Positions 4,491 through 29,581 of a stretch of DNA of 32,000 bases are shown here, piece by piece. The notes beneath the pieces are model-generated. The model searched no databases and was not told where the DNA came from. It saw only the letters and a program-made list of their open reading frames with translations. Source of the stretch: Paramicrosporidium saccamoebae KSL3 (lineage: Eukaryota > Fungi > Cryptomycota); the NCBI GenBank assembly GCA_002794465.1, contig MTSL01000174.1, forward strand, positions 44,484 through 76,483. The letters run 5' to 3'. A program made the position numbers and the translations under genes. Each line of letters opens with the position of its first letter. The first letter of the stretch is position 1.

Positions 4491-5588
4491 TCAAGGGAGA
4501 CGCAAGGGAAGCATAGTGTCAAAGACTACATCCCAGATCATGTTGCTCACCCCAAAGCCCTGATTCGGATTCACATAATGATGGTCCATGTGATACGTCT
4601 TCATCCGCTGCACATATTTGGGCAGAAAGGTGCCGTGATGTGAGTAGTAGTGGATCATGTCATATGCCACGTAGCCTGTAAGTGAGCCGGCCAGCAACAT
4701 TGCGGCGATGGGAGCGTCAAATAGGATGCGAAGCGTAATGGCCACCGGAATGGTAAAGGCACTCATCAGGAGGGGTGGCATCACCAAGCGATACCGATCC
4801 ATTGGCAGGAAATGGTGTACTCCGTGTATCAGGAAATGAACCACCAGGGCCATTGGGCGTTCTGGAAGTGCTTCGTCCATGTGGAAGACGAATCGGTGAA
4901 AGAAATACTCGTATATGGTCCACAACACCAGTCCATCAACATAATAGTGCGCTGCCGCCACTGTAGGAATACTTTGGGCAGCATATCGGGTCAGAAGGAA
5001 AATTATCGGGAGCCAAAATATCAACACACCATACCAAGTGTTCTTTGTAAAGAATTCCAAAATTGGACTGGCAAAAAAGACTGGCGTTGTGCTGGTGTAG
5101 CGCGGAATGTGCACCTGCTCCAGATAGTAGTTTTTACTCCACGTGTTTGCCCACACCTGCGGCATCAGGGGCTTGCTCAAGTCTAGAAATTCCTCATCTC
5201 GCCTCTCCCGCATGGTTGCACTCAGCGGCAATTCCTTTACCAACACACTGTCTTGATAACCCTTTAACGGCACATTGTCTTGATAATCCTTTACCAGCAC
5301 TGCTGCCCCGCCCTTTAACACATCGCCTTGGTAATCCTTTAAAACACCGATTTGATAATCCTCCAGCAGCATTTGCGCGTAATCCGAGTGTCGATGGAGC
5401 TTGGCAAACGCTTCGGTAATGTCCTGTCCCGCATATTCCAGCAACACCTCCAAGCCACCGGGATGGTCCTCTGCAAATCCCGACACATTGTACACCTTTC
5501 CGGCGTAATGTACCCACAGGTCATCCTTGGTGGCGTGTTGGGAGACCTCTTCGGGAGTGTAGGTTGGTCTTCGTTGTACCAAAGGCAT
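4491..5588 (-). CDS. SCS7: Sphingolipid fatty-acid alpha-hydroxylase (cytochrome b5 + fatty acid hydroxylase domain)
   Basis: Cytochrome b5 heme motif (HPGG, YNVSGF, HSDYA) followed by His-box hydroxylase motifs (EYFFHRFVFH, IHGVHH, YDMIHY.SHH, HMDHH, FGVS). Start chosen at ATG 5588 (MPLVQRRPTYTPEEV); an upstream in-frame ATG lies at 5654. Confidence 0.95.
   Translation of the reverse strand: MPLVQRRPTYTPEEVSQHATKDDLWVHYAGKVYNVSGFAEDHPGGLEVLLEYAGQDITEAFAKLHRHSDYAQMLLEDYQIGVLKDYQGDVLKGGAAVLVKDYQDNVPLKGYQDSVLVKELPLSATMRERRDEEFLDLSKPLMPQVWANTWSKNYYLEQVHIPRYTSTTPVFFASPILEFFTKNTWYGVLIFWLPIIFLLTRYAAQSIPTVAAAHYYVDGLVLWTIYEYFFHRFVFHMDEALPERPMALVVHFLIHGVHHFLPMDRYRLVMPPLLMSAFTIPVAITLRILFDAPIAAMLLAGSLTGYVAYDMIHYYSHHGTFLPKYVQRMKTYHMDHHYVNPNQGFGVSNMIWDVVFDTMLPLRLP
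5234..5370 (-). repeat. In-frame 24-27-bp degenerate repeat (KDYQxxVL-like, 5-6 copies) inside SCS7
   Basis: The protein reads LEDYQIGVL KDYQGDVL KGGAAVLV KDYQDNVPL KGYQDSVLV KELP. The DNA shows recurring CCTTTA...TTGATAA units. Confidence 0.85.
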
Positions 5589-5879
5589 TTGCTTGTTGTC
5601 ACTGGCCGTTATTTCCAATTTAGGAAGATGACGCCTGATTTGGAGATGTTGCATACTGCGAATCTTACTGGTTGCTGCAAGGTTGTCAAGTGTTTACAAA
5701 CTTTGTGTAATCCAATTGGAGCCCGTCTAAAGAATGGCGTCATGATTTTGTGACCATATCCAGATACTGGTCCAGTAATATTAGTTAGACGCATTTCCAG
5801 TGGTAGTCTCTTGAATATACCCACTTGCAATGCATCTATCGATAATGTTATCTGAAACGAATAAAGGAATTAGTTGTTA

Positions 5880-12385: not shown

Positions 12386-14040
12386 ATGTTTCTTGAGCGC
12401 AAGCCCAAGTTCCGTAGTCGGAAGTTGGACTTTAACAGAGTACTGCCCGTGTATCGACATGACGAGGTGGACGATTTTGACGAGTTTGAGGAGCCCACAA
12501 GATCCGTGGCGCAAGTGGCAACTGGAGTAGACAAGGAAGAGGAGGATGTAAGGAGCAGTTGAGAATGCTGACATTATAGGAACATCACTTGAAGCAGGCC
12601 TTGACCCAGTCCAGTAGGTCGCAGGCCTATTACATTCCCACTCCGGAGGCGGCGCAGGCGTCTGAATCCTACCAGGAGATATACAAGGCTGATTTTAAGC
12701 AGCCAAAGGCCTATGCAAAGTGCGGTCCAGATGATCCATTGCAGCTGTTTCCAAAATATAATGGCGATCATATTGACGAGACATTTATCGACAATCTTCG
12801 AAAGGAGGGTGTGATTGACGCAAAATTTGATCTGACCCTGTACGAGTGGATTGTGGATTGTCTGGAAGATGCGGCGCACAAGTTTAGCGAGAACATTGCC
12901 AGTAATGAGTCACTTGAGAGGCTTCGGGATCGACACTCTGCTGCTTTGCCAGAAGAGGCCACAGTAAACAAAATGATTGAACACTGGAAAGAGCGGCGGA
13001 TTCAACAACGGAGGATCATTCCAACCCTGCGACATGAAGACCTGGGCAAGATTGGTGCCGACCCTTATGTCTGTTTCCGAAGGAGGGAGCTGAAGATTCC
13101 TCGAAAGACCAGACGAAGCGACGCTCAGATCACTGATCGACTGAAAAAACTGCACTTGGATCTGTCGTCCATGAAGCTGATGCTACATGCTGCAGCGAAG
13201 CGAGATCGGTACAAGAGAGAAGCATTGGTTTTGGAGGGCGAATTGTTTGAAAAATACCGACTTGTGGATAATTGGAGGAAACATCACAAAAGTGACTGGC
13301 CACCCCATCTGGCTACCTTTAAAATTGCTGCACAGAGTCTTTTGGAGCCCAAGAAGAAAAAGAGTCGCATTGAAGGCGATACGCTAGATGGACTCATTGG
13401 TGCCTACAAGATTGCAATTCCGGTGGCGGCTCTGAAGAGTTCGCGACATGGGCGGCCATATTATCCTCACGAAGTGGGACGGATGATCCAGAAAGATATG
13501 GATATTTTGTTGGGACATCATGGAAACCAGGATGCCCTGACGGACGATTTCTGTCCCGATTTTCGAGACCTTTCTGGCCAGGACTTTTATAATTCGCCCT
13601 GGCTCCATGGACAGCCGGTTTCGTTTCGAAGGGGACGGGGTGGTCGTGTAATTGTGGATCGGCCAAGGATTAGCATCCCACCAACCCGCCCTCTCCAGGA
13701 TCTCTCGGATCCGGCCATCATCAAGTTCCACTCCACCCTCCTCACAGCCAAAGATTTTACCCAACTACAGACCCCCGTCGGCAATTACAACGTTCATGCC
13801 GTTCAGACTGCCAACCAAATCCTGCGTCCCATGTCATATCAGGCGTGGGTGGCGTCTACGGCGCCCATCCTGGTGGCTCTCTCTGGGAAGCCGCGCAGTC
13901 CAAAAAAGAAAAGAGAGGATGGCGGGGCACAGATTACGGTCAAGGTGAAGAGTCAGCCAAAGGAGGCCGCGCGGAGGGGCACGGGGGCGAGATTTACGCC
14001 GCACGGACTGGCGCCAGAGTCTAACGATGATGGTAAATAG
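12386..14040 (+). CDS. EPL1: Enhancer of polycomb-like protein (NuA4 subunit), 2 exons, about 540 aa
   Basis: Exon 12386-12547, a 32-nt intron (GTAAGG...CTGACATTATAG), and exon 12580-14040. The product has FRSRKLDFNRVLPVY, ATGVDKEEED|EHHLKQAL, YIPTP, HWKERR and DPYVCFRRRE. Confidence 0.92.
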
Positions 14041-14101
14041 AATTCCGCATGAATGTATTTTATATTTATTTTGTGTGGGTGCCCAGGGTCGGGATTTCGC
14101 C

Positions 14102-17100
14102 ATGGACCAGTTAGAGAGGGCGTGGCAGGAGGTGGAGGAGTCTGCCCGGAACGGCACCTTTGATCCGCGTTCCCTCAACAAGGCGATGCGCTCCTATCTG
14201 GAACGACCCTCTGTTCTTGATGCATCGCGTATCATTGACTGGTGCCACCGTCTCTTCACAAGCACTCTGCCTCTGGACGATATCCTACTCGTTGTATGGC
14301 AGATTCTCTATACAGTTGCACCCCAAACGTCCTTTGAATCGACAGGTACGTGGATGACTTTAGGTAGGGAACGGGCGAGACTGATATTGGGATTGGCCAC
14401 ACCAGAGAATGTCTCGGGCATATTGGCGTTCCTTGTTGCGACTGTCGAGGAGGGTGGACTGAACACAGTGTTGGCGGCAACTATCATGGAGGTTGCTGAG
14501 CGGGTGGCCCGACAGTTTGGATTTAGGGAAACGATGCTGAGACTGGTGGAGGGGGTGGGGAGTAGCAAGGATGAGCTGGTCCTGCACAAGATACGGTCCT
14601 TGGTTGTGACACTGTATCGATCCAATCCACCACTAGAAAATAGGACAGCCTTGGACCGAATCTTGCAAGGAATTGACAGAGATGTCAAAATGAAATATCT
14701 CTTGCTCAAAGATCTTCTCGAATTTGACATTAATGTCCCCGGATTCACTGATCCGTGTCTACAGGATTTGCTTGTGTGTCTCGACGACAAGACTCTTGCT
14801 CCCTCCGTCTCTGAGTGCATCGTCTTGTTGGTAAAACTCAAAGGATACAGTCTCGTGGATCTTGTGGACGAAACGGGCCAACTGGGGGTCTATTTATTTC
14901 CTAAATTGGTACGCAAGCTCCCCAATGAGGCGATTGCGTTGCTGCAAACACTGGAAAGGGCGGCGTTGGAGGAGAGCACTGAACCGCGAATCTTGCAATA
15001 TTGCTCGCTGTACAATTCCATTTTGGGAGGTGAAATGCAACATCAGCCCCTGAATATGGTTCTGGCAAAGCGTGGATTGGTTGCCCATGATGAGATTCTC
15101 TGCAATCGAGCCTTTTCATGTCTCTGTCGTTCTTTCCACACCGACATGCCCTTTTCCGAAGGCGACACTGTGTATAGATTCCTTGTGGATGCTCAGATTG
15201 GGGTCACGGCTGATAACAGACAGCAGACGATTGCATCGTTGAAACAACTGGTGGAAATGCACTTTGCGCGACTCTACAAACTAGAGCGGGCCATCATGCG
15301 TGGTGAAATCCAAGAGACGGAATCTGAGGCGGCGGGAACTAAGGTATTGGATACAGAAATCAAGGCTATTATACAATTTTGGCGACGTATTGTAACACTT
15401 TCGGTAGAGTCTCTCACCGTTTCGGGGTATTACAACAAGAATGATCTCTGCATCAGAACACTTCTTTGCATAACTGAAGTTTGGAGGGAGAAATTGGCAA
15501 AGGTTACGGTAGAGTCACTTGGGCGTCGATTAGGTAATGTACATGAAACAATCATCGAGCCCCTACTACGGGATGATTTTATCAAGAGGATGTGTGAATG
15601 TGTGATGAACAATTCATTTGATACCGTAAGGGAGGGGGCTGCCAAGTTATTAAGATTGCTCAATGTCAAGTTTGATGCAGAATATATTACGGCGGAGCTC
15701 TTGCCAGCTTTGGCTGTACAGAGGGCGCATCTTATTGATGGAGCATCTCGTCTACTTGGTGTGTATTGTGATAAAATGAACAATCATAAGGAAGTGGCTG
15801 CTCTGTTGACAACGGCACTACAGGATGAAATTGCCAAATTGTCAACATCAGACGCCCTTGCCAATAGTCAAGCACTCGGCCTCATGGCTGGTCTGAGGTA
15901 AGGAATAAGGATTCGGGGTTTAACCTGTGTTTAGGGAACTGATGGCAAAGCCTGTCGATGCGGAAAATGTCTTGAAAATTGTCGATTGTTGTCGCCAGTT
16001 AGGTGTTCTTGTCACTGATTTTGTTTCACATCCATCGCCTGAGGGACATTTAGTGAATGTTGACGACGACGAAGAGGATGATGACATGAGCTTTTCCATT
16101 ATGACTTTTTGTTGGCGAGCTGTCAAGGAGAGCAGTGCATTGCTTGCCTGTTGTCTCTGGAGGATTGAACGAATGGACGTTGCTTTGTTGGAACAGACGG
16201 CGCGATATTTGGTGGAAATGCTATTAAAGATTCGTCATCCGGGTGCATTCATGTCGCTTGCCAAACCGCTCCGTGATGTTTGCCAGATTTGCTTCTCCCT
16301 TGGCAATGATGCGTCAAGAATTCCACAAAAACTGTTAAACGAGGCAATGGAGCAATGTGTCCTCCATCCAGAGGTGCAGACTACAAGACGCAGTGCAGGA
16401 CTGCCCGTCTGCATTGCCGCCATTGTGACGGCATCAAAGGACGCCCATCGACGCTGTAAGCTGCTGGGTGAGGCATTTGAGACGCTATTGTCGGTGATTC
16501 CAACTTTGGTATTCCAGCAAATTGCCCCTGATCCGCATGTGGTGCACACACTCAACATTCTCCGACAGCTATTTCGAGATTCTACGCTTGCTGAAGATGT
16601 CATCGCCCTCCTTCCCACTGGTTTCCGCCTCTGTTTCCTGGCATTTGGATCGCCAAGTTGGTCAGTTCGCAACAGCGGGATGATGCTTTTCACTGCACTA
16701 ATGAATCGCACTTTTGGAGTGAGACACGACACAGAAGAATATGCCAAGGGGAATTTGGTAGATGTGCGCAATCTGCATGCCCAATGCCCTTCCATCCTAG
16801 GTCTAATCATGGAAGAATGTAGTAAGAGCGTCCAGATGCTTGGAAACGAAGCGTGCTCCAGATATCAGATCGAGTTTGCCCTCTATCCTTTGCTGTCATT
16901 TATTCAGAGAATCCGATTCTCCATCGGTGGGGAGGCCCGACACACTGGCTTTTACACTGCTGCCATTGCATTTTGTTTGGGGTGTCTTGGGAGTGATATT
17001 ATGAAGGTGCGAAAAATGACGGCTCGATTGGTGGCGAATATGTGTGAGAGTGTGCTGATCAAGACGTTGACTTTGGATTGGATTGAGAATACATTGGAGA

Positions 17101-17771
17101 CTGGATGCAATCAATTGCACGGCTACTTATTGCTACTGAGAATACTGTATGATCAAAAAATTATCCAATCGGATATTTACGAACGACTAAATCGCATTCC
17201 TGATGGATTGGTTTGCTATCCACTGCAACAAATGCTCTGCCCTGATGTGTCAATTAAGGCAGAGGATGATGTGCCCATTGCCACGATTATCGAAAATGTG
17301 ACTGCACGTAGGTTACATCCAGAAGAAATTGTCATCCAAGTGCCTCGACTTGTTGAACATGCCATTTCTAATGAGCCATCGTTGTTTGCATTGTTGGAGA
17401 ACTTTTGGCTTGATTACGATCTCTCTGGGGAGTATCGATTGGCCATTGTCAAAGCTCTTCGTCCCTGCACGCATCCGTCTGTCCTGCGGCTACGCTACCT
17501 TGCCCTCACAGACGATTCCTACGAGATTCGGCAAATTGCATCGGGACCCCGTCTTGGTGCGTCGGCATCAGTTGCTCAATGTCTCCGGACGATTATCACC
17601 AAAGTGGGTGATTTAATGGATTACTTGCCGATCAGTGAAGAGGTGGATAGTGGAAGGAGAAAGTTGTTTGAACCGGAACCCTTGAATAGTTTCAAAGATC
17701 CCATTTGGGAGAGAGAACGCCTAAGCGAACAGCAACCGTGTGTAAACCAGCAATCAACCATAATACACTAG
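14102..17771 (+). CDS. TRM732: THADA/Trm732 (DUF2428) tRNA 2'-O-methylation cofactor, 2 exons, about 1210 aa
   Basis: A 37-nt intron at 15898-15934 (GTAAGG...TTAAC...TTTAG) joins two long ORFs in phase. DUF2428 motifs include CWRAVKESSALL, IRHPGAF, TTRRSAGLP, VHTLNILRQLFRDS, WSVRNSGMMLFTALMNRTFG and LYPLLSFIQR. Confidence 0.9.
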
Positions 17772-19086: not shown

Positions 19087-19104
19087 ATGTAATAAAGCGT
19101 TTCC

Positions 19105-20007: not shown

Positions 20008-20298
20008 GTGTTATTAAGAGGGGTGTTGCTGAGGGGGGGGACATTGTGAATAGATATATGTTGATAGGTGATATCATGAATACAAGCCCGAGAGGAGGGT
20101 ATAAGGATATCCGATCCACAAAGCATGAAATTTGTATAAAGTCTGATACTCGATGTGAGAATATCAAAGCCATTGACACTTGCGACGCTCGAGACATGTG
20201 ATATTCAACATTTCATACCTACTAATCCACTAATCCGCTCATCCACTCGCCCATATGCACACATTCATACATCCACACGTCTCAACCCACTCACACCC

Positions 20299-21310
20299 TC
20301 ACGATGATACTCGCTGTTTTACATTACGCTTGCGCTGCTTAAATTCAAACTCGTGACAATCACCTTCAATGGTGGGATTGATTAATTCGGTAGAGAGACA
20401 TGCCAAAGGTTCCTCTTGGAACCAAGGATGTTTTAGGGCCGTTTCAGTGTCAATTCGTTGTTCAGGGTCCATGGCCAGCAATCCTCGGACCAAATTCATT
20501 CCTAACTCACCTAATCGGGGACCAAATTCAGCCTCCAGGGAGATTCCTGGGGACGGCATTTCGCCCATGAGACGGAGCCACGGCCATCCGCCGACCATAG
20601 GTCCACATCGTTCACAGATTGCGCGTAATTGTGTCAACTCGTCCTGGCCAGTAAACACTGCCCGCCCTGAAATCAGCTCTAACAGAATACATCCCACGCC
20701 CCACATGTCCACACTGGGTCCATAGGAGGTGGCGCCAAGCAGCACTTCGGGGGGTCGATACCATAGGGTCACCACCCGATTAGTCAGCATTCTTGTTGTA
20801 CGCAGATCGGGATGACGCATACATTTGGCCAAACCAAAATCGGCGAGTTTGATGGCGCCATCACGACCAACGAGCACATTGCTGCCTTTTAAGTCACGGT
20901 GCAACACACCGTGGGAATGCAAATAGTGTAGCGCCTGCAAGATTCCCCGTAGAATGTACTTGACCTGTGCCATGGTCAGGCCTGCCGGCAACAGCCCCGC
21001 CAGGTCAAATTCCAAATATTCAAACACCAAAAAGACGGCCTCAGAGGAGGAGGCGCAGATGCTCTTTAATTTCACAATATTAGGATGGGCCATACTCTTG
21101 AGCAGTTTAATTTCGCGGGCTGCCGTGACGGGAAAGCCCTCTTTTTCGCTCTCCATGCGAATTTTCTTCAATGCCACCAACTCTCCCGTCTTTCGACAAC
21201 GAGCCTTGTATACCTTCCTAATGCCATTAATAACCCATTCAATGGTACCCGTAGGTGCCCTCGCCAACCTGGCTAATGCGCTCAAAAAGGTCCTCTATGC
21301 TGGCCGGCAT
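20299..21310 (-). CDS. CTK1: RNA Pol II CTD kinase catalytic subunit (Ctk1/CDK12), 2 exons, about 326 aa
   Basis: Exon 21310-21249, a 31-nt intron 21248-21218, and exon 21217-20299 restore FERISQVGEGTYG|KVYKA. Further motifs are EGFPVTAAREIKLL, HRDLKGSN and TNRVVTLWYRPPEVLLGATSYGPSVDMW. Confidence 0.9.
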
Positions 21311-21502
21311 TTGTGTAGATATATGTACAGCCCAGGGGTTAAGAGTATACTGCGAGTTTTATAAGGGTCTGTTGTGGGCATACAATGGATCAAAATTCGT
21401 ACTATTGTGAAATCGTATCTAATGGACCAAAACTCGTAATGTTATGAATTACTATCTCATCATTTTGAGCATATAATGGACCAAGGCTTGCAATATTTAC
21501 TC

Positions 21503-22720
21503 TTAATTTTTGTATTCAGTCTGAAAACGTTGTTCGTCGTACGGTTCTGCAATAATCTGTCGACCACCAAACCATCGCAAATGCATCACCCTAATGGCCT
21601 CCTCCAAGACGGTTGCCGTGCTAAACTTTACAAAAACCTTTACTGTCTTGTCGTCGTGTTCCAAATGCGCCTGGCAGCAGATAACGGGACCAAACTTGCT
21701 GCACTCCTCCGATACATCCACCTCTAATTCGGGAATGGCCTCGGGATCTTCTGCCAAGGTAGAGTAATCCTCCAGATTACGAAGAACCATAACAGAGGTT
21801 TCAAGGGGAGATGCTGAATTACTCGAGTTTCCCGAATTGCCTGAATTGCTTGAATTACTCAAAGTGCCCGAGTTGATCTGTTGTGCAGCTCGCAATACGG
21901 CAGTGGGCACTTTGTTGACTGGTGGGGAGATTGGCGTGTTCTTTAGTGACTCCATGCCATGCGGGATCGGGCCACCACTGATAGTCCGACCCACTTTGAG
22001 GAGTCGTTTGGCCAGCTCGAAATTATTTAGCGAAAAGATGGCACTGTTGGCACAGCCCTCATCTTCGTATTCTACATAGGCATAACCCCGATGTTTGCCC
22101 GTTTTCTCATCGGGTACCAAATGACAATGGCGGACTCGACCAAAAGCCTCCACCACCATCCGCAGCTCTTCTTCCTTGACCATTTCGTGCACATTGGCCA
22201 CATAGATCCGACCCTCCACCGGACGGGGTACTCCGGGCGGCAGATCGGCTGGAAAGTTGTTTGGACGGCCCACTCGAATGGCACGACCTCCTAATTCAGC
22301 TCCTTCCATCTGCTCCTGCGCCAGTGCAGCCGCCTCAGCCGTCTCAAACTCAATGAATCCATAGCCTCGATGGCGACGGTTGACGGGATCCTGCATCATA
22401 GACACTGACCGTACCGGGCCAAACTGCGAGAACAGCAGAGTGAGGTCTGCGTCGGAAATGTCAAATTGGATGGAGCCCACATAGATGCGTTGGAAGATGG
22501 CCATGCTACTGACCATGTGCGCCGGTGCCAACTGCGCAATAGCGGCCAGTGGAGTGGTTGCTGGCACATTTGCGTTCGACACAGGACTGGGGCCTATCCT
22601 GAACAATGCCATAATCTACCAATAAATGCATTTGCATGAATCATGTCGTACCTTTTCGTGTTCAATAGACGCATATGCCTTGGCCTGTTCCACCAGTTGG
22701 TCTCCCTCGGGATCCTCCAT
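21503..22720 (-). CDS. PUF60: Poly(U)-binding splicing factor PUF60/half-pint (RRM-RRM-UHM), 2 exons, about 393 aa
   Basis: Exon 22720-22652 (MEDPEGDQLVEQAKAYASIEHEK, resembling the recalled PUF60 AKKYAMEQS motif), a 36-nt intron ending in an in-frame TAG, and exon 22615-21503. RRM1 (RIYVGSI...HRGYGFIEF...VGRPNN), RRM2 (RIYVANVH) and the UHM (VMVLRN...EECSKFG...RWFGGRQI) are all present. Confidence 0.9.
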
Positions 22721-22888
22721 TTCGTTGTCCAAATACAGCCGTTACCCCTGCAGCGGGTGTGAGGGTCGGCTTAAAGTCACAGTCCTTTCAATGCAACCGT
22801 TGGGTTGCACATGATTAAATATGCAAATAATGAAAGCCTATACGACGAATTGAGGTCCTTTAATCTTTACTATCAAGAGAGAGAGTAC

Positions 22889-23090
22889 ATGGAGGATCAG
22901 TCCCCTTTGGTCATGACTACAAATCTCACGAGTATATGAAGGATCAGTCTCCTTGGGCCATGACTACAAATCTCACGAGTATATGCCGAATCAAATCTCG
23001 CAAATTTAGGACGGACCAAATCCCCAGCATATAACAGGCCAAATCTCCAACGTGTAACAGGTCAGATCTCACAAATATATGACAAATCAA
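22889..23090. repeat. About 24-bp degenerate minisatellite (about 9 units) containing a near-perfect 47-bp duplication
   Basis: 47-bp units start at 22889 and 22936. The CAAATC/CAGTC/CAGATC core recurs at about 22896, 22920, 22943, 22967, 22992, 23017, 23040, 23063 and 23083. Confidence 0.85.
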
Positions 23091-23194
23091 ACACTTTGAT
23101 TTTCAATACAAGCGCAAGCGGAAATTGCATGAAAACTGATATATTGTATATTGTTTCGAACTAATGAAAGAATACGCAGTTAGCCAATCAGGAC

Positions 23195-23623
23195 ATGATA
23201 ACTGCGTATTTATTCTTCTTCCTTGTCATCCAGCAGTGCACCTGCAGTCTGTTTGCGTTCAATCGGCATAGACGTACTGACTACTTGCAATACCATTACC
23301 TGCCCGAGGACGAGTTAATTGAACATTTGCACCCCAACACACATGGCAATACATATGTCCTCGATGCTAGCCAATTCACACTGCAGCGCCCCCTCTGGCG
23401 ACACGGCGCCGCCTCTATCAAGCCAAGATCCGTGCCAGTGGACAAGGTGGCCGAGATGATTCTTGAGGAAGACAAGTATGAACGGGTGCCGCTTCGGTCT
23501 CTCATTCAGGCGCTATGGAAGGTGTGGCCGCAGCTTGCCGATGACATTCCGTCAGCCAGGAAGAGGGAGAAACTGGGACTAGAGGAGCTTTTTGTCGGAG
23601 ATTGGCAATGGCGGGATGAATAA
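23195..23623 (+). CDS. Hypothetical secreted protein (142 aa), no recognised family
   Basis: ATG-initiated ORF with a signal-peptide-like N-terminus (MITAYLFFFLVIQQCTCS) and globular-looking composition. The stop codon overlaps AATAAA at 23619-23624. Confidence 0.6.
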   Translation: MITAYLFFFLVIQQCTCSLFAFNRHRRTDYLQYHYLPEDELIEHLHPNTHGNTYVLDASQFTLQRPLWRHGAASIKPRSVPVDKVAEMILEEDKYERVPLRSLIQALWKVWPQLADDIPSARKREKLGLEELFVGDWQWRDE

Positions 23624-23793
23624 ACGACAGCTTCTGTCATCAAAGAGTAGCAATGTAACCGCTGGCGTCCTGTAGCTAACACTTTTAGTAGGAATTGGCT
23701 ACATTCCAGTCGGACGATGCTGCCATTAGAGACTTGATAGACAGTAATCAGAGGATTATGAAATGCATCGACCTGTCGGCCCCGGCATCGTTC

Positions 23794-24023
23794 ATGCGTC
23801 CGAATCCCGCATTAACGCCGTCGCGATGGAATTGGCTAAGCATTAGCGAAGAGGGTCGTGAGCGTATCAATCGCATCACAGAGTACGCGAAACGCACACT
23901 TTATTACGGCTGGATTCCGTTTATCCTCATCTTGGGTACTGTCTTGCCAATATTAAGGTTGTAGGCTTTTGGAGAAGCGACCCACGTCCCTCTTTCTTCA
24001 GGATGTTGAATCCCCTAAGTTAG
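23794..24023 (+). CDS. TOM7: Mitochondrial outer-membrane translocase subunit Tom7
   Basis: SEEGRERINRITEYAKRTLYYGWIPFILILG, then a 29-nt intron at 23936-23964, then FWRSDPRPSFFRMLNPLS-stop, matching the Tom7 core and C-terminus. The 5' end is uncertain: ATG 23794 gives 66 aa, or 57 aa if the in-frame 27-nt intron 23820-23846 is spliced. Confidence 0.85.
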
Positions 24024-24096
24024 TCAGCCAGTCATATGAATACATTTATAACTAGACCATGTGCCGTTCGAATGGTTAGACCATATTTCATACAAC

Positions 24097-25365
24097 TTAG
24101 AAACCATCGCTGTCCTCAAGGTCCTCTTCGCCCAATTCGGCCAACAGCGTTGTCGCAAAGGAGGCAGTGCGAGCAGCAACCTGGAAACCCCATCCTTGGT
24201 ACAGCGACGCCACTCCCTCCTCGCGAACCATCCGCCATAGACAGTTGAGGAGGCCCGAATAGGGACGAGCCGTGCGCACCCGCGTAATGTACGGTGTACG
24301 ACTGGACGTGGTGCATTGGATGAGCAGCCGACGTCGGATAGTCTCTAATGGCATGGTTATTATGAGGGGAACGCAGGTGATAATGTTCTGCAATGCAATC
24401 CAGCCAATGGACAGGGCGAGAGAAGTGTCTTCGGCAGGTGTCATGTAGTAGTTTAGCAATGAAACAGGGAGGATCCTCAATACGGGCTGTATGAACGAGG
24501 TGGTAAAGGTCAGGATCGGATGTTTGAATAGACCAAAGAGTCCCGTCTCCTCTCGGGAAATGGTACGGAGTGCATGCCAAAAGCCATAATACTTGCGCTC
24601 AGGCATCCACACACTCTGGGCGACCAGTCGAAGCCGCACAAACTCCACCGGCGTCAGGAGAGTGCCCACAATGCCCTGTGCCACGCCGGCAATTAGCGAT
24701 GGTCGCACAACATCCTCTGCAAACAGACTCAATGGACCAAAATGCTCACGCAACACATTGCTACTCTCAAGAGCCTCCTCGACGGTGGCTCTCCCAACGT
24801 CCATGAGAACCTCATGGGTCCAGCCTGCCATCACGCCTTGCCATAGACTAAATAATCCCTGTCGACGGCTAATCTCGCCCAAACTGCCCCACAGCGATTT
24901 GTGTTTGTTGAGGTTTAGTGGCCATTGGGAGGACAAATAACCTGCCGGCAGACGCTCAGAGAGATAGCCGGTAGAGTCACGGGAAATGTCTGAGGGAATG
25001 CGGCCGTAAATGTTGCCTTCCGAGGCGTACATTTCGCCTATCCGTTGAGATTCGCGTTTTGAAAAGTGTTCCTCGCGCTCCTTCCGCTGCTGATCCATCA
25101 GTGTGGCATCCCACCAGGCCGATTGTGCATTCCGGACATCATCCGGCACCTCCTCCTCTTCTTCGTCTCCGTTGTTGCATTGGATTTGTCGGAGCAGTCG
25201 TGCCGTCTCAAAGGGGCTGCTAATGGCCGCAACTCCGAACTTTAGTAACGCATAACGTCCGACCTGTGTAAGAGTACTGTGAATAGAGCGTTCGCTCTCA
25301 CTAGCAAGTTCACTGTCCAAGTATTCGCTATATGCCGACTTTGGAAGAGTGCCACGAGAGGACAT
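24097..25365 (-). CDS. UGO1: Ugo1/SLC25A46-type mitochondrial fusion protein (carrier fold), 422 aa
   Basis: Degenerate carrier signatures (SPFETARLLRQ, TPVEFVRLRL, MPLETIRRRL) and carrier repeats (QGLFSLWQG, YSGLLNCLWRMVREEGVASLYQGW). The long acidic insert after the first signature is typical of Ugo1. Confidence 0.75.
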   Translation of the reverse strand: MSSRGTLPKSAYSEYLDSELASESERSIHSTLTQVGRYALLKFGVAAISSPFETARLLRQIQCNNGDEEEEEVPDDVRNAQSAWWDATLMDQQRKEREEHFSKRESQRIGEMYASEGNIYGRIPSDISRDSTGYLSERLPAGYLSSQWPLNLNKHKSLWGSLGEISRRQGLFSLWQGVMAGWTHEVLMDVGRATVEEALESSNVLREHFGPLSLFAEDVVRPSLIAGVAQGIVGTLLTPVEFVRLRLVAQSVWMPERKYYGFWHALRTISREETGLFGLFKHPILTFTTSFIQPVLRILPVSLLNYYMTPAEDTSLALSIGWIALQNIITCVPLIITMPLETIRRRLLIQCTTSSRTPYITRVRTARPYSGLLNCLWRMVREEGVASLYQGWGFQVAARTASFATTLLAELGEEDLEDSDGF

Positions 25366-25711
25366 TTGGGGTTTGGGAGACTCGTCTTTAACAAAACATT
25401 AATTGGGAGATTGTAGTTAAAGCTATCCCTGGCCCATAACGAGATACTGGCCGACTATACACCAGTACTCGCACTAATATCCAATGGCGCAATTTGGCCG
25501 TTTAATAAAAGATCAATGGATTTGTTAAGGAAGAATAACAGTGGCCAATTTTTGATTGGATGGTGATCCGAAATGGAAATGGCTCGACCTGAAATGGCAA
25601 GAGCAACAGAACAGGACCAATAAACGGGGATGCAGGCACAGTGTCGCGTAGCTACGGAGAAAGTTGCAAAAGGGCAGCTATTTATTTTTACTTGTTCCGG
25701 AGCAGCACGAC

Positions 25712-28381
25712 ATGGATCCATTTGGCCGCTATGATCGACGCTCAAGCAGTGACGAAATCCACGGACATCGACGTTCCCACTCTGTGGCCTATGGAGGGGA
25801 TCGCTACTACGGCTATGATCCACGCTATCGTCCGCCCCCATACTATGCAGCAGCATACCAACACCACGACAGCTGTCTTGGCGGCTGCGGGATGGACCGT
25901 CGGTCACGTCGAAAGGTGCGAAATTGGCTACTGCTGCTAGCTCTTGCAGCCGTAGTGGGTTTCCTGACATACCGACGTCTGGGCGGAGCAGACATGAAAA
26001 GTCGACTAACTGAAACGACGATTGAGAACATTATTGACGAGGTAATGGGGAAGAGCATAACCCGACCTGAAATGATTGTGCCCCCAGATGCAGCGCCAAA
26101 GGTACGGATGGCCAAGCAGTCAGCGCCAGAGAAGGAGCGACCGCCCAACCCAGAGGAGCGCGACATTACTGACAATGATCCGCTGGATATTCCGCTCGTA
26201 AGAGAGTCCCCTCCCGTTGCTGCCAAGAAATTAGCCGAAACACTCGTTGCCCTGGATAATCAACCAGAGGAGGGAGAAGAGGGAGGATTGGAAGGGAGAA
26301 AATTGGCAAAACAAATTGAACCAATCGCTGATCTCCAAAAGATGTTGGGGGTGGGCGAGGCATCTCTGCAAAAGTTGAATGAGCAAATTGAGGAACTGAC
26401 GAGGAAACTATCAACGCAATCCCAGATGGTGGAGGACCTGCAACGCGGTCTTTCCAACGATCAAGGCCCTGTCTATGGCGCAGTGGATACACGTTCTGAT
26501 CGTGGAATGGCCGAATCGACAATGGGACAGGATATGCTGCGTCAGTTGGGAATCAAATCGAGGAATGGAGCAGTCCCAAGACCAGCACCCCCGCCCATCC
26601 AGGATCCAGTAGGACAGAAACCCTTTTCTCGTCGCGTGACATTCAGCAACTCGCCCGTCTCTTCGGTTGTGTGCACGGGATCCGATACGGTGGATCGAGT
26701 GTGCAAGATTAAGAACCTGTGCTACGACCCCAGCAAGGATCGCTTCTTCATCTTCAAGGATGTGTCGACCTTGGAGGTGGGAGTTCCCAAGAATCGCACC
26801 TATTTGGTGGATTCGACTTCCATTGACGGCCACAACAAATTTGCATTTGATTACAGCGAAGTGCATCCAGACGCCTTCCGTCAACGCACTGTGGAAATGG
26901 TCGATCGACCAACATTTATGATCAGTCGTTTCCATGCGCTCAACATTATGCACACCATCCACGATGACTTTTTGGGTCTGTACGGGCTGCATCGCATGTT
27001 TGCAAGCAGTGACGAGGTGGACGAGCGTTTCGTCTTTAGTCGCAACAACCACATCCTCTTCCTCGACTCTTTTGAAAACATTCGCTACGATTACGTCTTC
27101 CAATTCCTAACGGACAATCCCTTGCAATTCCGTCAGCGTCTACACGAGAACAATCCTAGAAGCGACACTCCCATTTGTTTCCGTGATGCTGTGGTTGGAA
27201 ACAGCAAAGTCGGCTCATGGTACAGCTACGGCTTTTTGGAGCCTCAGGGTCCCATTGCCAACAAAACTGTCTCGGGATTATATGTGCGGGATGCAGCACG
27301 TTTCCTCATGAACCGCATGGATCTGCCTCTTTGGGATGAGATCACTGTGCGTAGTACCATCCAGGAACTCTATCTGCGCAAGATGAAGCGGGAACGCGAG
27401 GGAAAGCCCCGTTCCAAGGTGCCATTGGCCACAGATCAAATGTTTATTACCGTCTTTTCTCGTCAGCTCGATCGTCTTATGGTCAATGAGGCCGAGGTCA
27501 TCAATGGACTGCAGGACACTTATGGATTACCAGTACGGACGGTGCGTATGGAAGACATGCACATTGGTCAACAGGCTGCCATCCTGCGCTCTACTGCCAT
27601 TGCAGTTGGAGTACACGGCTCCGCCCTCATCCTCTCCATCTTCCTCCCACCCGGCGCCATTCTCATAGAGCTCTTCCCCTATACTGTGCCCGCTGAGAAT
27701 TATACACCCTATCGCACCCTTGCTTCTCTACCCGGAATGCGACTTGCCTATCGCGCCTGGACCAACAAACGCTCCGAAAACAACTATCCTCATCCGGAAC
27801 GGCCTCCTTCCGGCGGTGGTATTGCCCATCTTCCCCTTGTTGAGCAGGAAAAGATCAAGAACACTTTGACTGTGCCTCCTCATCTCTGTTGTCGTGATCC
27901 CTACTGGCTCTATCGCATCTATCAGGACACCAGGGTCGAATTGTCAGAGCTCTACGATGCCATTGACGATGCCTTTGCTGATTCGCTCAAGCTCCTCGAT
28001 ATTTCACCCCAATCCTTCGTTGCCATCCGACCTGGCATCATTGATACTGTTCGCTGTTCGGTACGTGCACCTCCGGGTCTTGATCATTCCAAACTCACCA
28101 ATACCACCCAGCTGCAGATGGATATTAGCTGGGATGAGCCCTGGAACGGCGTCCAGCCCGACAAGTACGGCATCTGGATCCATCAGCCCTACCAAGAGTT
28201 CTTCAGCACCTCCCCCATGCTTGAGCCTCCCAAGTGTGCCTACGGCAGCAAGTATGACATTTGGGTGAGGTCCTATGTCGCCGTCCCCAACACTGATGGT
28301 CTCATCAAGAGTCAATACTCGGAAAAGTTTACTTGTAAGTGTATCCCAGAGACCAGGGCGCAGCGTGGTGACGAATCCTAG
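25712..28381 (+). CDS. POMGNT2: POMGNT2-like protein O-mannose beta-1,4-N-acetylglucosaminyltransferase (GT61 + C-terminal FN3), type II membrane, about 889 aa
   Basis: A single TM segment (WLLLLALAAVVGFLTY) is followed by a long stem. Catalytic-region motifs are CKIKNLCY, RFHALNIMHTIHDDFLGLY, CFRDAVVG, FSRQLDRLMVNE, HGSALILSIFLPPGAILIELFPY, YTPYRTLASLPGM, HPERP..GGIAHL and VPPHLCCRDPYWLYRIYQDT. An FN3-like tail follows (PGIIDTVRC...ISWDEPWN...YGIWI). These match recalled POMGNT2 motifs rather than EOGT. Confidence 0.88.
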   Translation: MDPFGRYDRRSSSDEIHGHRRSHSVAYGGDRYYGYDPRYRPPPYYAAAYQHHDSCLGGCGMDRRSRRKVRNWLLLLALAAVVGFLTYRRLGGADMKSRLTETTIENIIDEVMGKSITRPEMIVPPDAAPKVRMAKQSAPEKERPPNPEERDITDNDPLDIPLVRESPPVAAKKLAETLVALDNQPEEGEEGGLEGRKLAKQIEPIADLQKMLGVGEASLQKLNEQIEELTRKLSTQSQMVEDLQRGLSNDQGPVYGAVDTRSDRGMAESTMGQDMLRQLGIKSRNGAVPRPAPPPIQDPVGQKPFSRRVTFSNSPVSSVVCTGSDTVDRVCKIKNLCYDPSKDRFFIFKDVSTLEVGVPKNRTYLVDSTSIDGHNKFAFDYSEVHPDAFRQRTVEMVDRPTFMISRFHALNIMHTIHDDFLGLYGLHRMFASSDEVDERFVFSRNNHILFLDSFENIRYDYVFQFLTDNPLQFRQRLHENNPRSDTPICFRDAVVGNSKVGSWYSYGFLEPQGPIANKTVSGLYVRDAARFLMNRMDLPLWDEITVRSTIQELYLRKMKREREGKPRSKVPLATDQMFITVFSRQLDRLMVNEAEVINGLQDTYGLPVRTVRMEDMHIGQQAAILRSTAIAVGVHGSALILSIFLPPGAILIELFPYTVPAENYTPYRTLASLPGMRLAYRAWTNKRSENNYPHPERPPSGGGIAHLPLVEQEKIKNTLTVPPHLCCRDPYWLYRIYQDTRVELSELYDAIDDAFADSLKLLDISPQSFVAIRPGIIDTVRCSVRAPPGLDHSKLTNTTQLQMDISWDEPWNGVQPDKYGIWIHQPYQEFFSTSPMLEPPKCAYGSKYDIWVRSYVAVPNTDGLIKSQYSEKFTCKCIPETRAQRGDES

Positions 28382-28545
28382 ATATTTTGTATGTAAAAAG
28401 TCCTTGATACCTATATATGGACCATTTTCGATGTAATTGATTGTTTTTTGCGTTACCAAAAAAGATTTTATCAAAGTATCGGCAGTCTGTAATCCACCAA
28501 TCTTGAATTGCTGCTTTCGACAGTTTAATCATTGAAATCTACAAT

Positions 28546-29094
28546 TTATTCATTTGTTGGAGCTTCCTCTTCCCATAGTTCATATTGCTTCTTCTTTTTC
28601 TTAATAATCTCATCGGCTTCTTTTAGCATTGCTGCAAGATCTTCCTTCTTTACTGCCCAGCGAGGATCAATTGTGGATGGTGCCTTTGATGTCGCAGCGG
28701 GCTTGGCTTTGCCAGGTCTTCCCACTGGTAGAGGCCTTCCTAGCACTGGTAGAGGTCCTCCTGGCACTGGTAGAGGTCCTGGCGCTGGCGGTGGTCCTCC
28801 TCCTGGTGGTGGTGGTCCTCCTCCTGGTGGCGGCGGTGGTCCTCCTCCTGGTGGTGGTGGTCCTCCTCCTGGTGGTGGTGGCGGCCTTCCTCCTGGTGGT
28901 GGTGGTCCTCCTCCTGGTGGCGGCGGCGGTCCTCCTCCCGGTGGTGGTGGCCCTCCTCCTGGTGGCAGTGGCGGCCTTCCTCCTGGTGGTGGTGGTCCTC
29001 CTGTTGCTACCGGCGGTTTATTACCAGCTGCTTGGGAGAGGCCATAAAAACCGACCATAAGCAGCGCTTTCGAGGTGACATTGTCCCTCTTCAT
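28546..29094 (-). CDS. Predicted secreted Gly/Pro-repeat protein with a Lys-rich C-terminus (about 182 aa)
   Basis: ATG 29094 starts MKRDNVTSKALLMVGFYGLSQAAG (weak signal peptide; the track start 29229 is GTG). GGGPPPP(P) repeats precede a charged helical tail (KEDLAAMLKEADEIIKKKKKQYELWEEEAPTNE). The stop overlaps AATAAA. Confidence 0.7.
   Translation of the reverse strand: MKRDNVTSKALLMVGFYGLSQAAGNKPPVATGGPPPPGGRPPLPPGGGPPPPGGGPPPPPGGGPPPPGGRPPPPPGGGPPPPGGGPPPPPGGGPPPPGGGPPPAPGPLPVPGGPLPVLGRPLPVGRPGKAKPAATSKAPSTIDPRWAVKKEDLAAMLKEADEIIKKKKKQYELWEEEAPTNE
28724..29000 (-). repeat. Coding tandem repeat: three 21-bp ACTGGTAGAGG units, then alternating 21/24-bp CCT/GGT units (45-bp higher-order period)
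   Basis: CCTCCTCCTGGTGGTGGTGGT alternates with CCTCCTCCTGGTGGCGGCGGTGGT-like units across about 28795-29000. Confidence 0.9.
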
Positions 29095-29581
29095 TGTGCC
29101 ATCCGTCCATTCATGCGCCGTGGATATAGTCCACTCCGCACCAATGGGATTTCGAGAATGCATTTCATGCTCGATTGAGTCTTTGGTGCCTTTGGAGGTT
29201 TTATCATTAAATAGAATCGAGTTGGCCACTCGAGAGTGTATTAGGGATACATGGCTTAATGAATAGTCCTTCTACAATTTGACCATTTCTGCATCTTTGT
29301 ATTTTTACTTTACCCCCAACGAGTCCCTATTGGTTCGGTCTTGTCCAATCAACCGACAGCTCTGCCTGCGTCTGGGCTCTATTCCTGTCTGTCCAATCCA
29401 ATACAAGCACTTTTCCGGATAAAAGATGGTGTATTCAGGGAAACTGGTAAAGGGGGATAGAATCTCTACAATGTGTCATGTCGTACATAGGATCAATGTC
29501 AAGGGCCATTTGACTCGCGACATGAGCTCTAAAGTTATCAACAATTAGTATTGTTGCCCTGGCTCAGCACCACGGACCGCG

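What the first reader, a model, noticed from the sequence alone, without database searches (positions are those of the whole stretch)
25712..28381. Animal-type core-M3 O-mannose glycosyltransferase (POMGNT2) in a fungal-lineage genome
Seen: the ordered set of POMGNT2-like motifs, including HDD at 26960, CCRDPYWLYRIYQDT at 27887 and the C-terminal FN3 module, in a neighbourhood of fungal-type genes (SCS7, UGO1, TOM7, Kin4-like kinase). Established: POMGNT2 adds beta-1,4-GlcNAc to O-mannose in the ER to start core M3 on alpha-dystroglycan, which B3GALNT2, POMK, FKTN, FKRP, RXYLT1, B4GAT1 and LARGE then extend. Yeast O-mannose is instead elongated by KTR/MNT mannosyltransferases. Inference: this organism may build a GlcNAc-extended O-mannose glycan on surface proteins, either an ancestral opisthokont pathway or a host-interaction coat.
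Basis: partly seen in the sequence, partly recalled or inferred. Interest (0 to 1): 0.85.

Follow-up and report, generated by a model that had tools for sequence, protein, structure and literature searches.

The report
POMGNT2 orthologue in a rozellid fungus
The gene is an intact, conserved copy of POMGNT2, the enzyme that adds GlcNAc to protein-bound mannose, in the amoeba parasite Paramicrosporidium saccamoebae; it is not an animal import, because the same gene is inherited vertically in Rozella, aphelids and many chytrid fungi, so it dates back to the common ancestor of animals and fungi.

Summary
Window 25712..28381(+) is one uninterrupted 889-aa ORF, identical to PSACC_02748 of Paramicrosporidium saccamoebae (Rozellomycota). 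It matches solved POMGNT2 structures along the whole catalytic and FnIII region (profile 636 bits; EOGT 62 bits). The AlphaFold model (pLDDT 92.8) finds only POMGNT2 as a full-length fold match. Every donor-binding, catalytic and mutagenesis-essential acceptor residue is kept.

The framing as an animal-type oddity is not supported. Full-length orthologues exist in Rozella, the aphelid Paraphelidium, at least 15 chytrid genera (many already auto-named POMGNT2), choanoflagellates and Pigoraptor. The gene tree mirrors the species tree. An independent environmental relative carries the gene in the same gene order, and its composition matches the neighbouring genes. Horizontal transfer, contamination and chimera are therefore rejected.

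The gene is an ancestral opisthokont gene, and no copy was seen among named Dikarya, Mucoromycota or Microsporidia. The most likely function is a type II membrane beta-1,4-GlcNAc transferase acting on O-mannosylated proteins other than dystroglycan. The activity, the substrates and the rest of the core-M3 pathway could not be tested. This is a new member of a known kind, of moderate interest.

The parts
25712..28381 (+). Complete single-exon CDS (889 aa + stop) of the POMGNT2 orthologue, PSACC_02748
   Evidence: ORF. It is 100% identical to P0001. The start MDPFG is shared with relative P0002, and the end ...SQYSEKFTCxC is shared with P0002, P0003, P0006 and P0012.
25712..25924 (+). Cytosolic N-terminal tail (aa 1-71), rich in Arg, Tyr and His, with an RRSRRKVR cluster just before the membrane anchor
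   Evidence: Sequence and hydropathy. The positive-inside orientation is an inference.
25925..25972 (+). Single transmembrane signal-anchor (aa 72-87, WLLLLALAAVVGFLTY), giving type II topology
   Evidence: It is the only N-terminal Kyte-Doolittle 19-residue window above 1.6. The other hydrophobic stretch, aa 627-655, is a buried Rossmann strand in the model.
25973..26659 (+). Lumenal stem (aa 88-316) with a coiled-coil-like segment around aa 190-250. It is much longer than in animals and poorly conserved (31% identity to the syntenic relative).
   Evidence: Weak coiled-coil Pfam hits, a consensus heptad-like pattern in relatives, N-extension lengths and divergence.
26660..27325 (+). GT-B N-lobe (aa 317-538), the acceptor-binding half
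   Evidence: Aligned to bovine POMGNT2 residues about 65-277. The model is confident here.
26942..26965 (+). NxxHxxxD motif (N411-I-M-H414-T-I-H-D418): N411 corresponds to the UDP beta-phosphate ligand N163, and H414 to the proposed catalytic base H166.
   Evidence: Residue map. Roles come from PMC8360118, PMC13123520 and bioRxiv 10.1101/2025.07.18.665579. The positions are invariant in 33 Holomycota and 12 Holozoa sequences.
27326..27436 (+). Inter-lobe linker with a helical insertion of about 25-30 aa (aa 539-575), shared by rozellid and chytrid sequences and absent from animals
   Evidence: 37-residue gap against bovine. Linker lengths are 60-80 against 38-45 residues. The model predicts a helix with high pLDDT.
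27437..28018 (+). GT-B C-lobe (aa 576-769), the donor-binding half, including the POMGNT2-specific insertion carrying the CC motif
   Evidence: Pfam GT61 hits aa 579-651.
27461..27487 (+). RxxxRxxxN motif (R584, R588, N592), corresponding to the UDP-phosphate ligands R294 and R298
   Evidence: The positions are invariant in all 45 sequences.
27887..27931 (+). CCRDPYWLYRIYQDT: C726 and C727 correspond to C436 (mannose contact) and C437 (TPT contact), and Y737 to the UDP alpha-phosphate ligand Y447
   Evidence: The mutagenesis evidence is in PMC8360118.
28019..28342 (+). C-terminal fibronectin type III domain (about aa 770-877) with peptide-binding aromatics W822, W851 and Y869, corresponding to W525, W559 and F572

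Best explanation
The gene encodes a true orthologue of POMGNT2, inherited vertically from the last common ancestor of animals and fungi. The protein is a type II membrane protein. It has a cytosolic tail of about 70 aa, one membrane anchor, and a long lumenal stem with a coiled-coil-like segment. [quoted passage not shown] By analogy with the solved bovine and human enzymes, it most likely works in the ER or early secretory pathway. There it would bind UDP-GlcNAc through the N411/R584/R588/Y737/E614 constellation and use H414 as the base to activate O4 of a protein-linked mannose. The product would be GlcNAc-beta1,4-Man-O-Ser/Thr. The FnIII domain of a partner protomer would help hold the acceptor peptide. 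No dystroglycan has been reported outside Metazoa (PMC8478517 reports none in choanoflagellates), so the acceptors must be other O-mannosylated secretory or surface proteins. Several peripheral acceptor contacts are changed in the Holomycota sequences, which suggests a different peptide context. Shown here: orthology, domain architecture, residue conservation, purifying selection, vertical descent and native genomic location. Inferred: donor, linkage, acceptor, localisation and dimerisation.
For: Identity and family: (POMGNT2 636 bits full length against EOGT 62.5 bits). Fold: AF2 pLDDT 92.8 and pTM 0.88. The 16 best Foldseek hits are all POMGNT2 (E about 1e-51, TM 0.65-0.79), followed only by isolated FN3 domains. 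Active site: N163, H166, R294, R298, E324, Y447, C436, C437, H125, F159 and F247 are all identical in the window protein and nearly invariant in 33 Holomycota sequences, and the FnIII aromatics are kept (roles from PMC8360118 and PMC13123520). Selection: in the catalytic domain pN is 0.24 while pS is 0.82 (saturated) against the syntenic relative, whereas the stem is only 31% identical. Vertical descent: named orthologues occur in Rozella, Paraphelidium, at least 15 chytrid genera, two choanoflagellates, Pigoraptor and animals. In the NJ tree Holozoa are monophyletic at 100%, with the order Pigoraptor, then choanoflagellates, then animals, and the window protein sits inside a rozellid-like clade. 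A longer inter-lobe linker is shared by the Holomycota sequences. Native locus: the contig is 122.9 kb and full of housekeeping genes. GC, GC3 and codon usage match the neighbours. An independent environmental contig has the same gene order, with neighbours 40-52% identical and the GT61 gene 52% identical. Topology.
Against: There is no biochemical or glycomic evidence for any fungal or rozellid member. Several acceptor contacts differ from animals, and some of the changes are shared by many Holomycota sequences: T127K, N160H, Q527H, N532E, T533F, L557D and V575K. UDP-surround residues Q296L and Q348A also differ. Acceptor specificity, and conceivably fine donor specificity, could therefore differ. 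The presence of PMT/POMT in this genome, needed to make the O-Man acceptor, and of any downstream enzyme was not tested. The tree is neighbour-joining without an outgroup, and deep Holomycota nodes are weakly supported (16-51%). Pfam fn3 does not hit the C-terminal domain by sequence.
Confidence: 0.78

Rival explanations
1. It is a POMGNT2 orthologue by descent, but its chemistry has shifted in Holomycota. It would have the same fold and the same UDP-sugar mechanism, yet use a different acceptor (another sugar or peptide context, for example a wall or spore glycoprotein mannan) or a different UDP-sugar donor.
For: Substitutions shared across Holomycota sequences occur at acceptor-contact and UDP-surround positions (T127K, N160H, Q348A, Q527H, N532E, V575K). 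A Holomycota-specific helical insertion lies in the inter-lobe linker next to the active-site cleft. Dystroglycan has not been reported outside Metazoa (PMC8478517). Single-residue switches of donor specificity are documented in plant GT61s (bioRxiv 10.1101/2025.07.18.665579).
Against: All residues shown by mutagenesis to be essential for mannose and TPT recognition (H125, F159, H166, C436, C437) are identical, and so are all UDP ligands. The changed positions include ones whose alanine mutants kept wild-type activity in the bovine enzyme (N532, Y534; PMC8360118).
Confidence: 0.17
2. The gene is foreign to the parasite. It would be either a horizontal transfer from an animal or from the amoeba host, or a contaminating or chimeric contig segment.
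For: At first sight the best characterised relatives are animal enzymes. The organism is an intranuclear parasite, a setting in which transfers are plausible.
Against: The nearest relatives are rozellid-like environmental sequences and Rozella, not animals. Holozoa form a separate 100% clade. No amoebozoan sequence appears among the named hits. Composition and codon usage equal those of the neighbours. The gene lies mid-contig among housekeeping genes. The junctions and gene order are reproduced in an independent assembly, with GT61 as diverged as its neighbours. The Rozella copy is on a 719-kb scaffold and appears in two assemblies.
Confidence: 0.02
3. The gene is a decaying or catalytically dead relic with no glycosyltransferase function.
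For: The genome is reduced and belongs to an obligate parasite. The deposited annotation is only 'hypothetical protein'.
Against: The 889-codon ORF is intact. Every catalytic and donor residue is kept. Non-synonymous change is strongly suppressed in the catalytic domain while synonymous sites are saturated. The genome paper's supplements held no data for this gene, so expression is unknown.
Confidence: 0.03

Closest known systems
Vertebrate POMGNT2 (GTDC2/AGO61; PDB 7E9J/7E9K/7E9L, 6XFI, 6XI2, 8KB7), CAZy GT61
   Same: The order of domains is the same: type II anchor, GT-B catalytic domain, C-terminal FnIII. Identity is 32% over about 530 aligned residues. The NxxHxxxD, RxxxRxxxN, HG(S/A) and CC...RIYQDT motifs are shared. 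All UDP ligands, the catalytic His, the essential Man/TPT contacts and the FnIII aromatics are identical or conservatively replaced.
   Different: The N-terminal region before the catalytic domain is about 320 aa, against about 50-75 aa in animals. The inter-lobe linker carries a helical insertion of about 25-30 aa. Peripheral acceptor contacts are altered (T127K, N160H, Q527H, N532E, V575K). The organism has no known dystroglycan, so the substrates must differ.
Auto-annotated POMGNT2-like proteins of Rozella allomycis, Paraphelidium tribonemae and Chytridiomycota (for example Spizellomyces punctatus SPPG_02325 and Rhizophlyctis rosea)
   Same: They are direct orthologues at 34-44% identity with full-length coverage. 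They share the long N-terminal extension and the longer linker.
   Different: The window protein belongs to a distinct Paramicrosporidium-like subclade that is otherwise known only from metagenomes (50-74% identity). The deposited P. saccamoebae entry is 'hypothetical protein', and its 3' end is probably mis-spliced.
EOGT (EGF-domain O-GlcNAc transferase, GT61; PDB 9WJK)
   Same: It is also GT61, with the GT-B fold, the N-R-R UDP constellation and the equivalent His (PMC13123520).
   Different: It scores only 23 bits with the single sequence and 62.5 bits with the profile, over the core alone. It has no FnIII domain and no CC...RIYQDT insertion.
[quoted passage not shown]
   Same: They share the GT61 core motifs NxxHxxxD and RxxxRxxxN (bioRxiv 10.1101/2025.07.18.665579).
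   Different: They have polysaccharide or N-glycan acceptors and no FnIII domain. No plant GT61 appeared in any search from this protein.

Membership tests
POMGNT2 (GT61 subfamily) | GT61 catalytic domain | tested here: met
   Pfam PF04577 at E=3e-12, 47 bits against a cutoff of 27.
POMGNT2 (GT61 subfamily) | Closer to POMGNT2 than to the other GT61 subfamilies (EOGT, plant GT61) | tested here: met
   The single sequence scores 273.6 bits against 23.1 bits, and the profile 636 against 62.5 bits. All named full-length database relatives are POMGNT2 or unnamed GT61. An outgroup-rooted tree was not possible, because no EOGT or plant sequences could be retrieved.
POMGNT2 (GT61 subfamily) | N-R-R UDP-binding constellation plus Tyr and Glu ligands (N163, R294, R298, Y447, E324) | tested here: met
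   N411, R584, R588, Y737 and E614.
POMGNT2 (GT61 subfamily) | Catalytic base His166 in NxxHxxxD, and His345 in the HGA motif | tested here: met
   H414 with D418. H635-G-S is invariant in relatives.
POMGNT2 (GT61 subfamily) | Mannose and TPT-motif contacts that are essential by mutagenesis (H125, F159, C436, C437, plus F247) | tested here: met
   H374, F407, C726, C727 and F508 are all identical. The non-essential contacts T127 and N160 differ (K376, H408).
POMGNT2 (GT61 subfamily) | C-terminal FnIII domain with peptide-binding aromatics (W525, W559, F572) | tested here: met
   The alignment runs to bovine residue 579. The model shows a beta-sandwich, and Foldseek finds FN3 domains. W822, W851 and Y869 occupy the aromatic positions. 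Pfam fn3 is not detected by sequence.
POMGNT2 (GT61 subfamily) | Type II membrane topology with a lumenal catalytic domain | tested here: met
   There is a single N-terminal hydrophobic anchor at aa 72-87, preceded by an Arg/Lys cluster. Localisation to the ER is an inference.
POMGNT2 (GT61 subfamily) | Domain-swapped dimer in which the FnIII of one protomer serves the active site of the other | not tested
   Only a monomer was modelled. A coiled-coil-like stem might favour dimerisation, but that is an inference.
POMGNT2 (GT61 subfamily) | Enzymatic activity: UDP-GlcNAc to beta-1,4 on protein O-mannose | not testable with these tools
   This needs an in vitro assay or glycomics.
Core M3 / matriglycan pathway | Upstream O-mannosyltransferase (POMT/PMT) in the same genome | not tested
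   The tools gave no way to scan the whole P. saccamoebae genome or proteome. It is expected from general knowledge of fungi, but it was not verified.
Core M3 / matriglycan pathway | Downstream enzymes B3GALNT2, POMK, FKTN, FKRP, CRPPA, RXYLT1, B4GAT1 and LARGE in the same genome | not tested
   No query sequences and no whole-genome access were available. None is encoded in the 32-kb window. No paper was found on this subject.
Core M3 / matriglycan pathway | Dystroglycan as acceptor | not tested
   Dystroglycan is reported absent even from choanoflagellates (PMC8478517). It was not searched for here.

The most novel reading that the evidence does not exclude
POMGNT2 would not be a lone relic. 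Rozellids, aphelids and chytrids would keep a functional O-Man-GlcNAc (core-M3-like) glycan, perhaps with further ancestral or lineage-specific extension. It would sit on a defined set of non-dystroglycan surface proteins used during their wall-less stages (zoospore, amoeboid or intracellular stage) for adhesion or host contact. On this reading core M3 was an adhesion glycan of the opisthokont ancestor, later co-opted by dystroglycan in animals and lost with the walled, non-motile lifestyle of higher fungi and in Microsporidia. The shared changes on the FnIII and acceptor surface would then mark the ancestral or alternative acceptor motif.
Probability: 0.2. Interest if true: 0.65.

Novelty: new member of a known kind. 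Interest (0 to 1): 0.35.

Why it matters
The published survey traces the dystroglycan-glycan enzymes back only to choanoflagellates (PMC8478517). This gene and its Rozella, aphelid and chytrid orthologues move the origin of the core-M3-initiating enzyme, FnIII acceptor-reading domain included, to the opisthokont ancestor. That raises a concrete question: what did POMGNT2 glycosylate before dystroglycan existed? The question is testable in a non-pathogenic, transformable chytrid, Spizellomyces punctatus, which carries an orthologue (SPPG_02325; transformation tools in PMC7213984). The result also corrects a database record: PSACC_02748 can be named, and its 3' end fixed. It is not a surprise of the first order, because annotation pipelines already label the chytrid proteins POMGNT2.

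Tried and rejected
1. The full-length query in the word-indexed database returned only 16 hits. The likely cause is that the low-complexity N-terminal third dominated candidate selection. I solved this by using aa 300-889 and family profiles.
2. The first tree script, using Biopython's distance calculator, timed out. I replaced it with a numpy Kimura-distance NJ tree with 100 bootstraps.
3. EOGT and plant GT61 sequences were not retrievable: the top-150 and top-120 lists were filled by POMGNT2-type proteins, and PDB alignments print only the five best matches. I relied instead on the tenfold bit-score gap, the subfamily-specific motifs and domain, and the unrooted topology.
4. dN/dS could not be computed for the catalytic domain or the whole gene. 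Synonymous sites are saturated against the closest relative with DNA. Only the FnIII segment gave a finite value (dS 2.67, dN/dS 0.175), so elsewhere I report pN against pS.
5. The genome paper (PMC5701793) and its supplements contain nothing on glycosylation, CAZymes, contamination or this locus tag.
6. Five literature searches found nothing on POMGNT2, GT61, fukutin, matriglycan or dystroglycan in chytrids, rozellids or Holomycota.
7. Horizontal transfer, contamination and pseudogene readings were considered and rejected (see rivals).
8. A whole-genome search for PMT/POMT and the downstream pathway enzymes was not possible with these tools.
9. The sample-labelled 'Selenidium pygospionis' homologue (P0031) falls on a long unresolved branch between the two opisthokont clades. 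I did not follow it up.
Full report
**1. What is in the sequence**

Window 25664..28381(+) is one uninterrupted reading frame. The first ATG is at 25712, giving an 889-aa protein. It is 100% identical to NCBI 'hypothetical protein PSACC_02748' of Paramicrosporidium saccamoebae, which UniRef labels 'Glycosyltransferase 61'. The window lies on contig MTSL01000174.1 (122,864 bp) of assembly GCA_002794465.1.

P. saccamoebae is a rozellid (Rozellomycota/Cryptomycota) that parasitises the nucleus of amoebae (PMC5701793). 'Fungal-lineage genome' is therefore correct.

HDD (H417-D419) begins at nt 26960, and CCRDPYWLYRIYQDT (C726-T740) begins at nt 27887.

- A Cyt-b5 + fatty-acid-hydroxylase protein (Scs7 type) at 4491..5654(-).
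- A mitochondrial-carrier protein (UGO1-like) at 24097..25365(-), and a protein kinase at 20299..21285(-).
- Tom7 at about 23195..23964(+).

The other genes in the window are ordinary housekeeping genes: cactin, THOC2, Es2, Trm732/THADA, Sld7 and an RRM protein.

**2. Which family**

Pfam finds GT61 (PF04577, E=3e-12). Against all PDB sequences the protein matches POMGNT2 at E=3e-80 in two stretches, and EOGT only at E=1.7e-4.

A profile of 32 family members matches bovine POMGNT2 with 636 bits, from residue about 61 to residue 579 of 580. EOGT scores 62.5 bits. The C-terminal 80 profile positions weakly hit cytokine-receptor FN3 domains.

An AlphaFold2 model of aa 300-889 is very confident (mean pLDDT 92.8, pTM 0.88). 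Its 16 best Foldseek matches in the PDB are all POMGNT2 chains (E about 1e-51, TM 0.65-0.79, about 580 aligned columns). Only isolated FN3 domains follow them.

It is not met.

**3. Active site and acceptor site**

I rebuilt the bovine sequence from the printed alignment. I checked that the published residue numbers fall on the right letters, and I aligned it with 45 family members. Roles are taken from PMC8360118, PMC13123520 and bioRxiv 10.1101/2025.07.18.665579.

| Role | Bovine residue | Window residue |
|---|---|---|
| UDP ligand | N163 | N411 |
| UDP ligand | R294 | R584 |
| UDP ligand | R298 | R588 |
| UDP ligand | Y447 | Y737 |
| UDP ligand (uridine) | E324 | E614 |
| Proposed catalytic base | H166 | H414 (within N411-x-x-H414-x-x-x-D418) |
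| HG(A/S) motif His | H345 | H635 |
| Man/TPT contact, essential by mutagenesis | H125 | H374 |
| Man/TPT contact, essential by mutagenesis | F159 | F407 |
| Man/TPT contact, essential by mutagenesis | C436 | C726 |
| Man/TPT contact, essential by mutagenesis | C437 | C727 |
| TPT contact | F247 | F508 |
| FnIII aromatic touching the acceptor peptide | W525 | W822 |
| FnIII aromatic touching the acceptor peptide | W559 | W851 |
| FnIII aromatic touching the acceptor peptide | F572 | Y869 |

The UDP ligands and the catalytic base are invariant in all 33 Holomycota sequences.

The differences are confined to peripheral contacts, and several recur in many Holomycota sequences. They are T127K, N160H, Q527H, N532E, T533F, L557D and V575K, plus the UDP-surround positions Q296L and Q348A. 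In the bovine enzyme the N532A and Y534A mutants kept wild-type activity (PMC8360118). The changed positions therefore need not affect catalysis, but they suggest a different peptide context.

**4. Architecture outside the conserved core**

- Residues 1-71 form an Arg/Tyr/His-rich tail ending in RRSRRKVR.
- Residues 72-87 are the only N-terminal hydrophobic anchor, which gives type II topology.
- Residues 88-316 form a poorly conserved stem with a coiled-coil-like stretch.

The region before the catalytic domain is about 320 aa here, 200-300 aa in many chytrids, and 50-77 aa in animals.

The linker between the two Rossmann lobes is 60-80 residues in rozellid and chytrid sequences, against 38-45 in animals. 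The extra part is modelled as a confident helix.

**5. Where it came from**

An exhaustive search of 1.84 billion cluster representatives found 301 clusters at E<1e-30. Two profile searches of the named database and a cluster look-up put names on many of them.

| Group | Named members |
|---|---|
| Rozellomycota | Rozella allomycis (44% identity) |
| Aphelida | Paraphelidium tribonemae |
| Chytridiomycota | Rhizophlyctis, Borealophlyctis, Spizellomyces, Gaertneriomyces, Polyrhizophydium, Entophlyctis, Homolaphlyctis, Blyttiomyces, Zopfochytrium, Irineochytrium, Cladochytrium (two species), Caulochytrium, Quaeritorhiza |
| Choanoflagellates | Salpingoeca rosetta, S. punica |
| Other Holozoa | Pigoraptor chileana |
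| Animals | many |

[quoted passage not shown] JGI also gives this KO name to environmental relatives. No Dikarya, Mucoromycota, Blastocladiomycota, canonical Microsporidia or Amoebozoa appear among the named hits. Only about a quarter of entries carry names, so this absence is suggestive and not proof.

I built a neighbour-joining tree from 46 sequences and 538 columns with 100 bootstraps.
- Holozoa are monophyletic at 100%, in the order Pigoraptor, then choanoflagellates, then animals.
- The window protein sits with 99-100% support among Paramicrosporidium-like environmental sequences.
- That clade lies within a broader, weakly resolved rozellid-like group that includes Rozella.
- The aphelid and the chytrids form their own groups.

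This is the species tree, so the gene descends vertically from the opisthokont ancestor.

**6. Not foreign, not chimeric, not decaying**

- GC, GC3 and codon usage are indistinguishable from the neighbours.
- An independent environmental assembly (Logan SRR28204433, L003) has the same gene order: Trm732, DIM1, Sld7, kinase, RRM, Tom7, mitochondrial carrier, GT61.
- In that assembly the neighbours are 40-52% identical and the GT61 gene 52% identical. The gene has therefore diverged in step with its surroundings.
- The Rozella orthologue is on a 719-kb scaffold and appears in two assemblies.
- Against the syntenic relative, synonymous sites are saturated (pS 0.82), while non-synonymous change in the catalytic domain is only 0.24. 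The stem is far more diverged.

**7. How it most likely works**

The protein is most likely a lumenal, membrane-anchored, inverting GT-B enzyme. It would transfer GlcNAc from UDP-GlcNAc to O4 of protein-linked mannose, as POMGNT2 does. The FnIII domain would help select the acceptor peptide.

Shown here: orthology, architecture, an intact catalytic and acceptor apparatus, and selection. Inferred: donor, linkage, acceptor identity, ER location and dimerisation.

Dystroglycan is reported absent even from choanoflagellates (PMC8478517). The acceptors must therefore be other O-mannosylated proteins.

From my own knowledge, not tested here: fungi generally have PMT O-mannosyltransferases, and microsporidian polar-tube and spore proteins are O-mannosylated. 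Spore, polar-filament or surface proteins are therefore plausible acceptors.

**8. Novelty**

The enzyme family and its mechanism are known. The published evolutionary survey reaches back only to choanoflagellates (PMC8478517). Structural and evolutionary work on GT61 covers metazoans, plants, slime moulds and bacteria (PMC13123520). Five full-text searches found no paper dealing with POMGNT2 or GT61 in chytrids, aphelids or rozellids.

The distribution is nevertheless plain in public databases. This is a new, unannotated member of a known kind, and it adds one modest evolutionary point: an opisthokont-wide origin, with loss in higher fungi.

**9. Limits**

- There was no outgroup-rooted ML tree.
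- There was no whole-genome scan for PMT/POMT, B3GALNT2, POMK, FKTN/FKRP, CRPPA, RXYLT1, B4GAT1 or LARGE.
- There were no expression data, and the genome paper's supplements held nothing for this gene.
- There was no biochemistry.

Noticed in passing
window 28330-29047 (+), against the ORF at 28546..29229 (-): The deposited gene model PSACC_02748 (1043 aa, ending at window 29047) drops the last ~17 codons (CKCIPETRAQRGDES...) and splices on a Pro/Gly-rich tail. All relatives end ...SQYSEKFTCxC plus a few residues, like the plain ORF that stops at 28381, so the deposited 3' end is probably wrong. The tail region is a 21/45-bp tandem repeat (28786-29002) that reads as (PPPPGGG)n on both strands. 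It may instead belong to a convergent proline-rich gene on the minus strand, which has no Pfam hit.
   Followed up: partly
L004 9440-10016 (Rozella allomycis KE561209.1): The Rozella orthologue's gene model (559 aa) stops before the FnIII domain. tblastn finds the FnIII-coding part (query aa 504-578 of the 590-aa region) just downstream of the annotated stop, in another frame. The Rozella model is therefore probably truncated by a missed small intron.
   Followed up: partly
window 12589-17771 (+): Three consecutive plus-strand ORFs (12589..14040, 14027..15901, 15927..17771) carry Trm732/THADA TPR and DUF2428 domains. The syntenic relative has a single product of about 1400 aa. They are probably one gene with short introns or frame changes, not three genes.
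   Followed up: no
window about 14000-28400, against L003 1-12751: A block of at least eight genes is collinear between P. saccamoebae and an uncultured relative from Logan run SRR28204433, at only 40-52% protein identity: Trm732, DIM1, Sld7, kinase, RRM, Tom7, mitochondrial carrier, GT61. Gene order is unusually well conserved for that divergence.
   Followed up: partly
window 31453-31995 (-): This ORF contains a long poly-Ser run and Asp/Pro/Ser repeats, over 6-, 18- and 30-bp tandem repeats at 31610-31870. It has no Pfam hit. It could be low-complexity coding sequence or a non-coding repeat.
   Followed up: no
P0031 (EukProt EP00923, Selenidium pygospionis sample): A full-length POMGNT2-like protein is labelled as coming from a gregarine transcriptome. 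It falls on a long unresolved branch between the Holozoa and Holomycota clades, not with animals. Its true source is unknown: the gregarine, a hyperparasite or another eukaryote in the sample.
   Followed up: no
P0020 / L002 (NCBI GCA_047514055.1, contig JBCAWG010015068.1): An unnamed NCBI assembly carries a single-exon orthologue (705 aa, 43% identity) that groups with the rozellid-like environmental clade. The organism was not identified.
   Followed up: no
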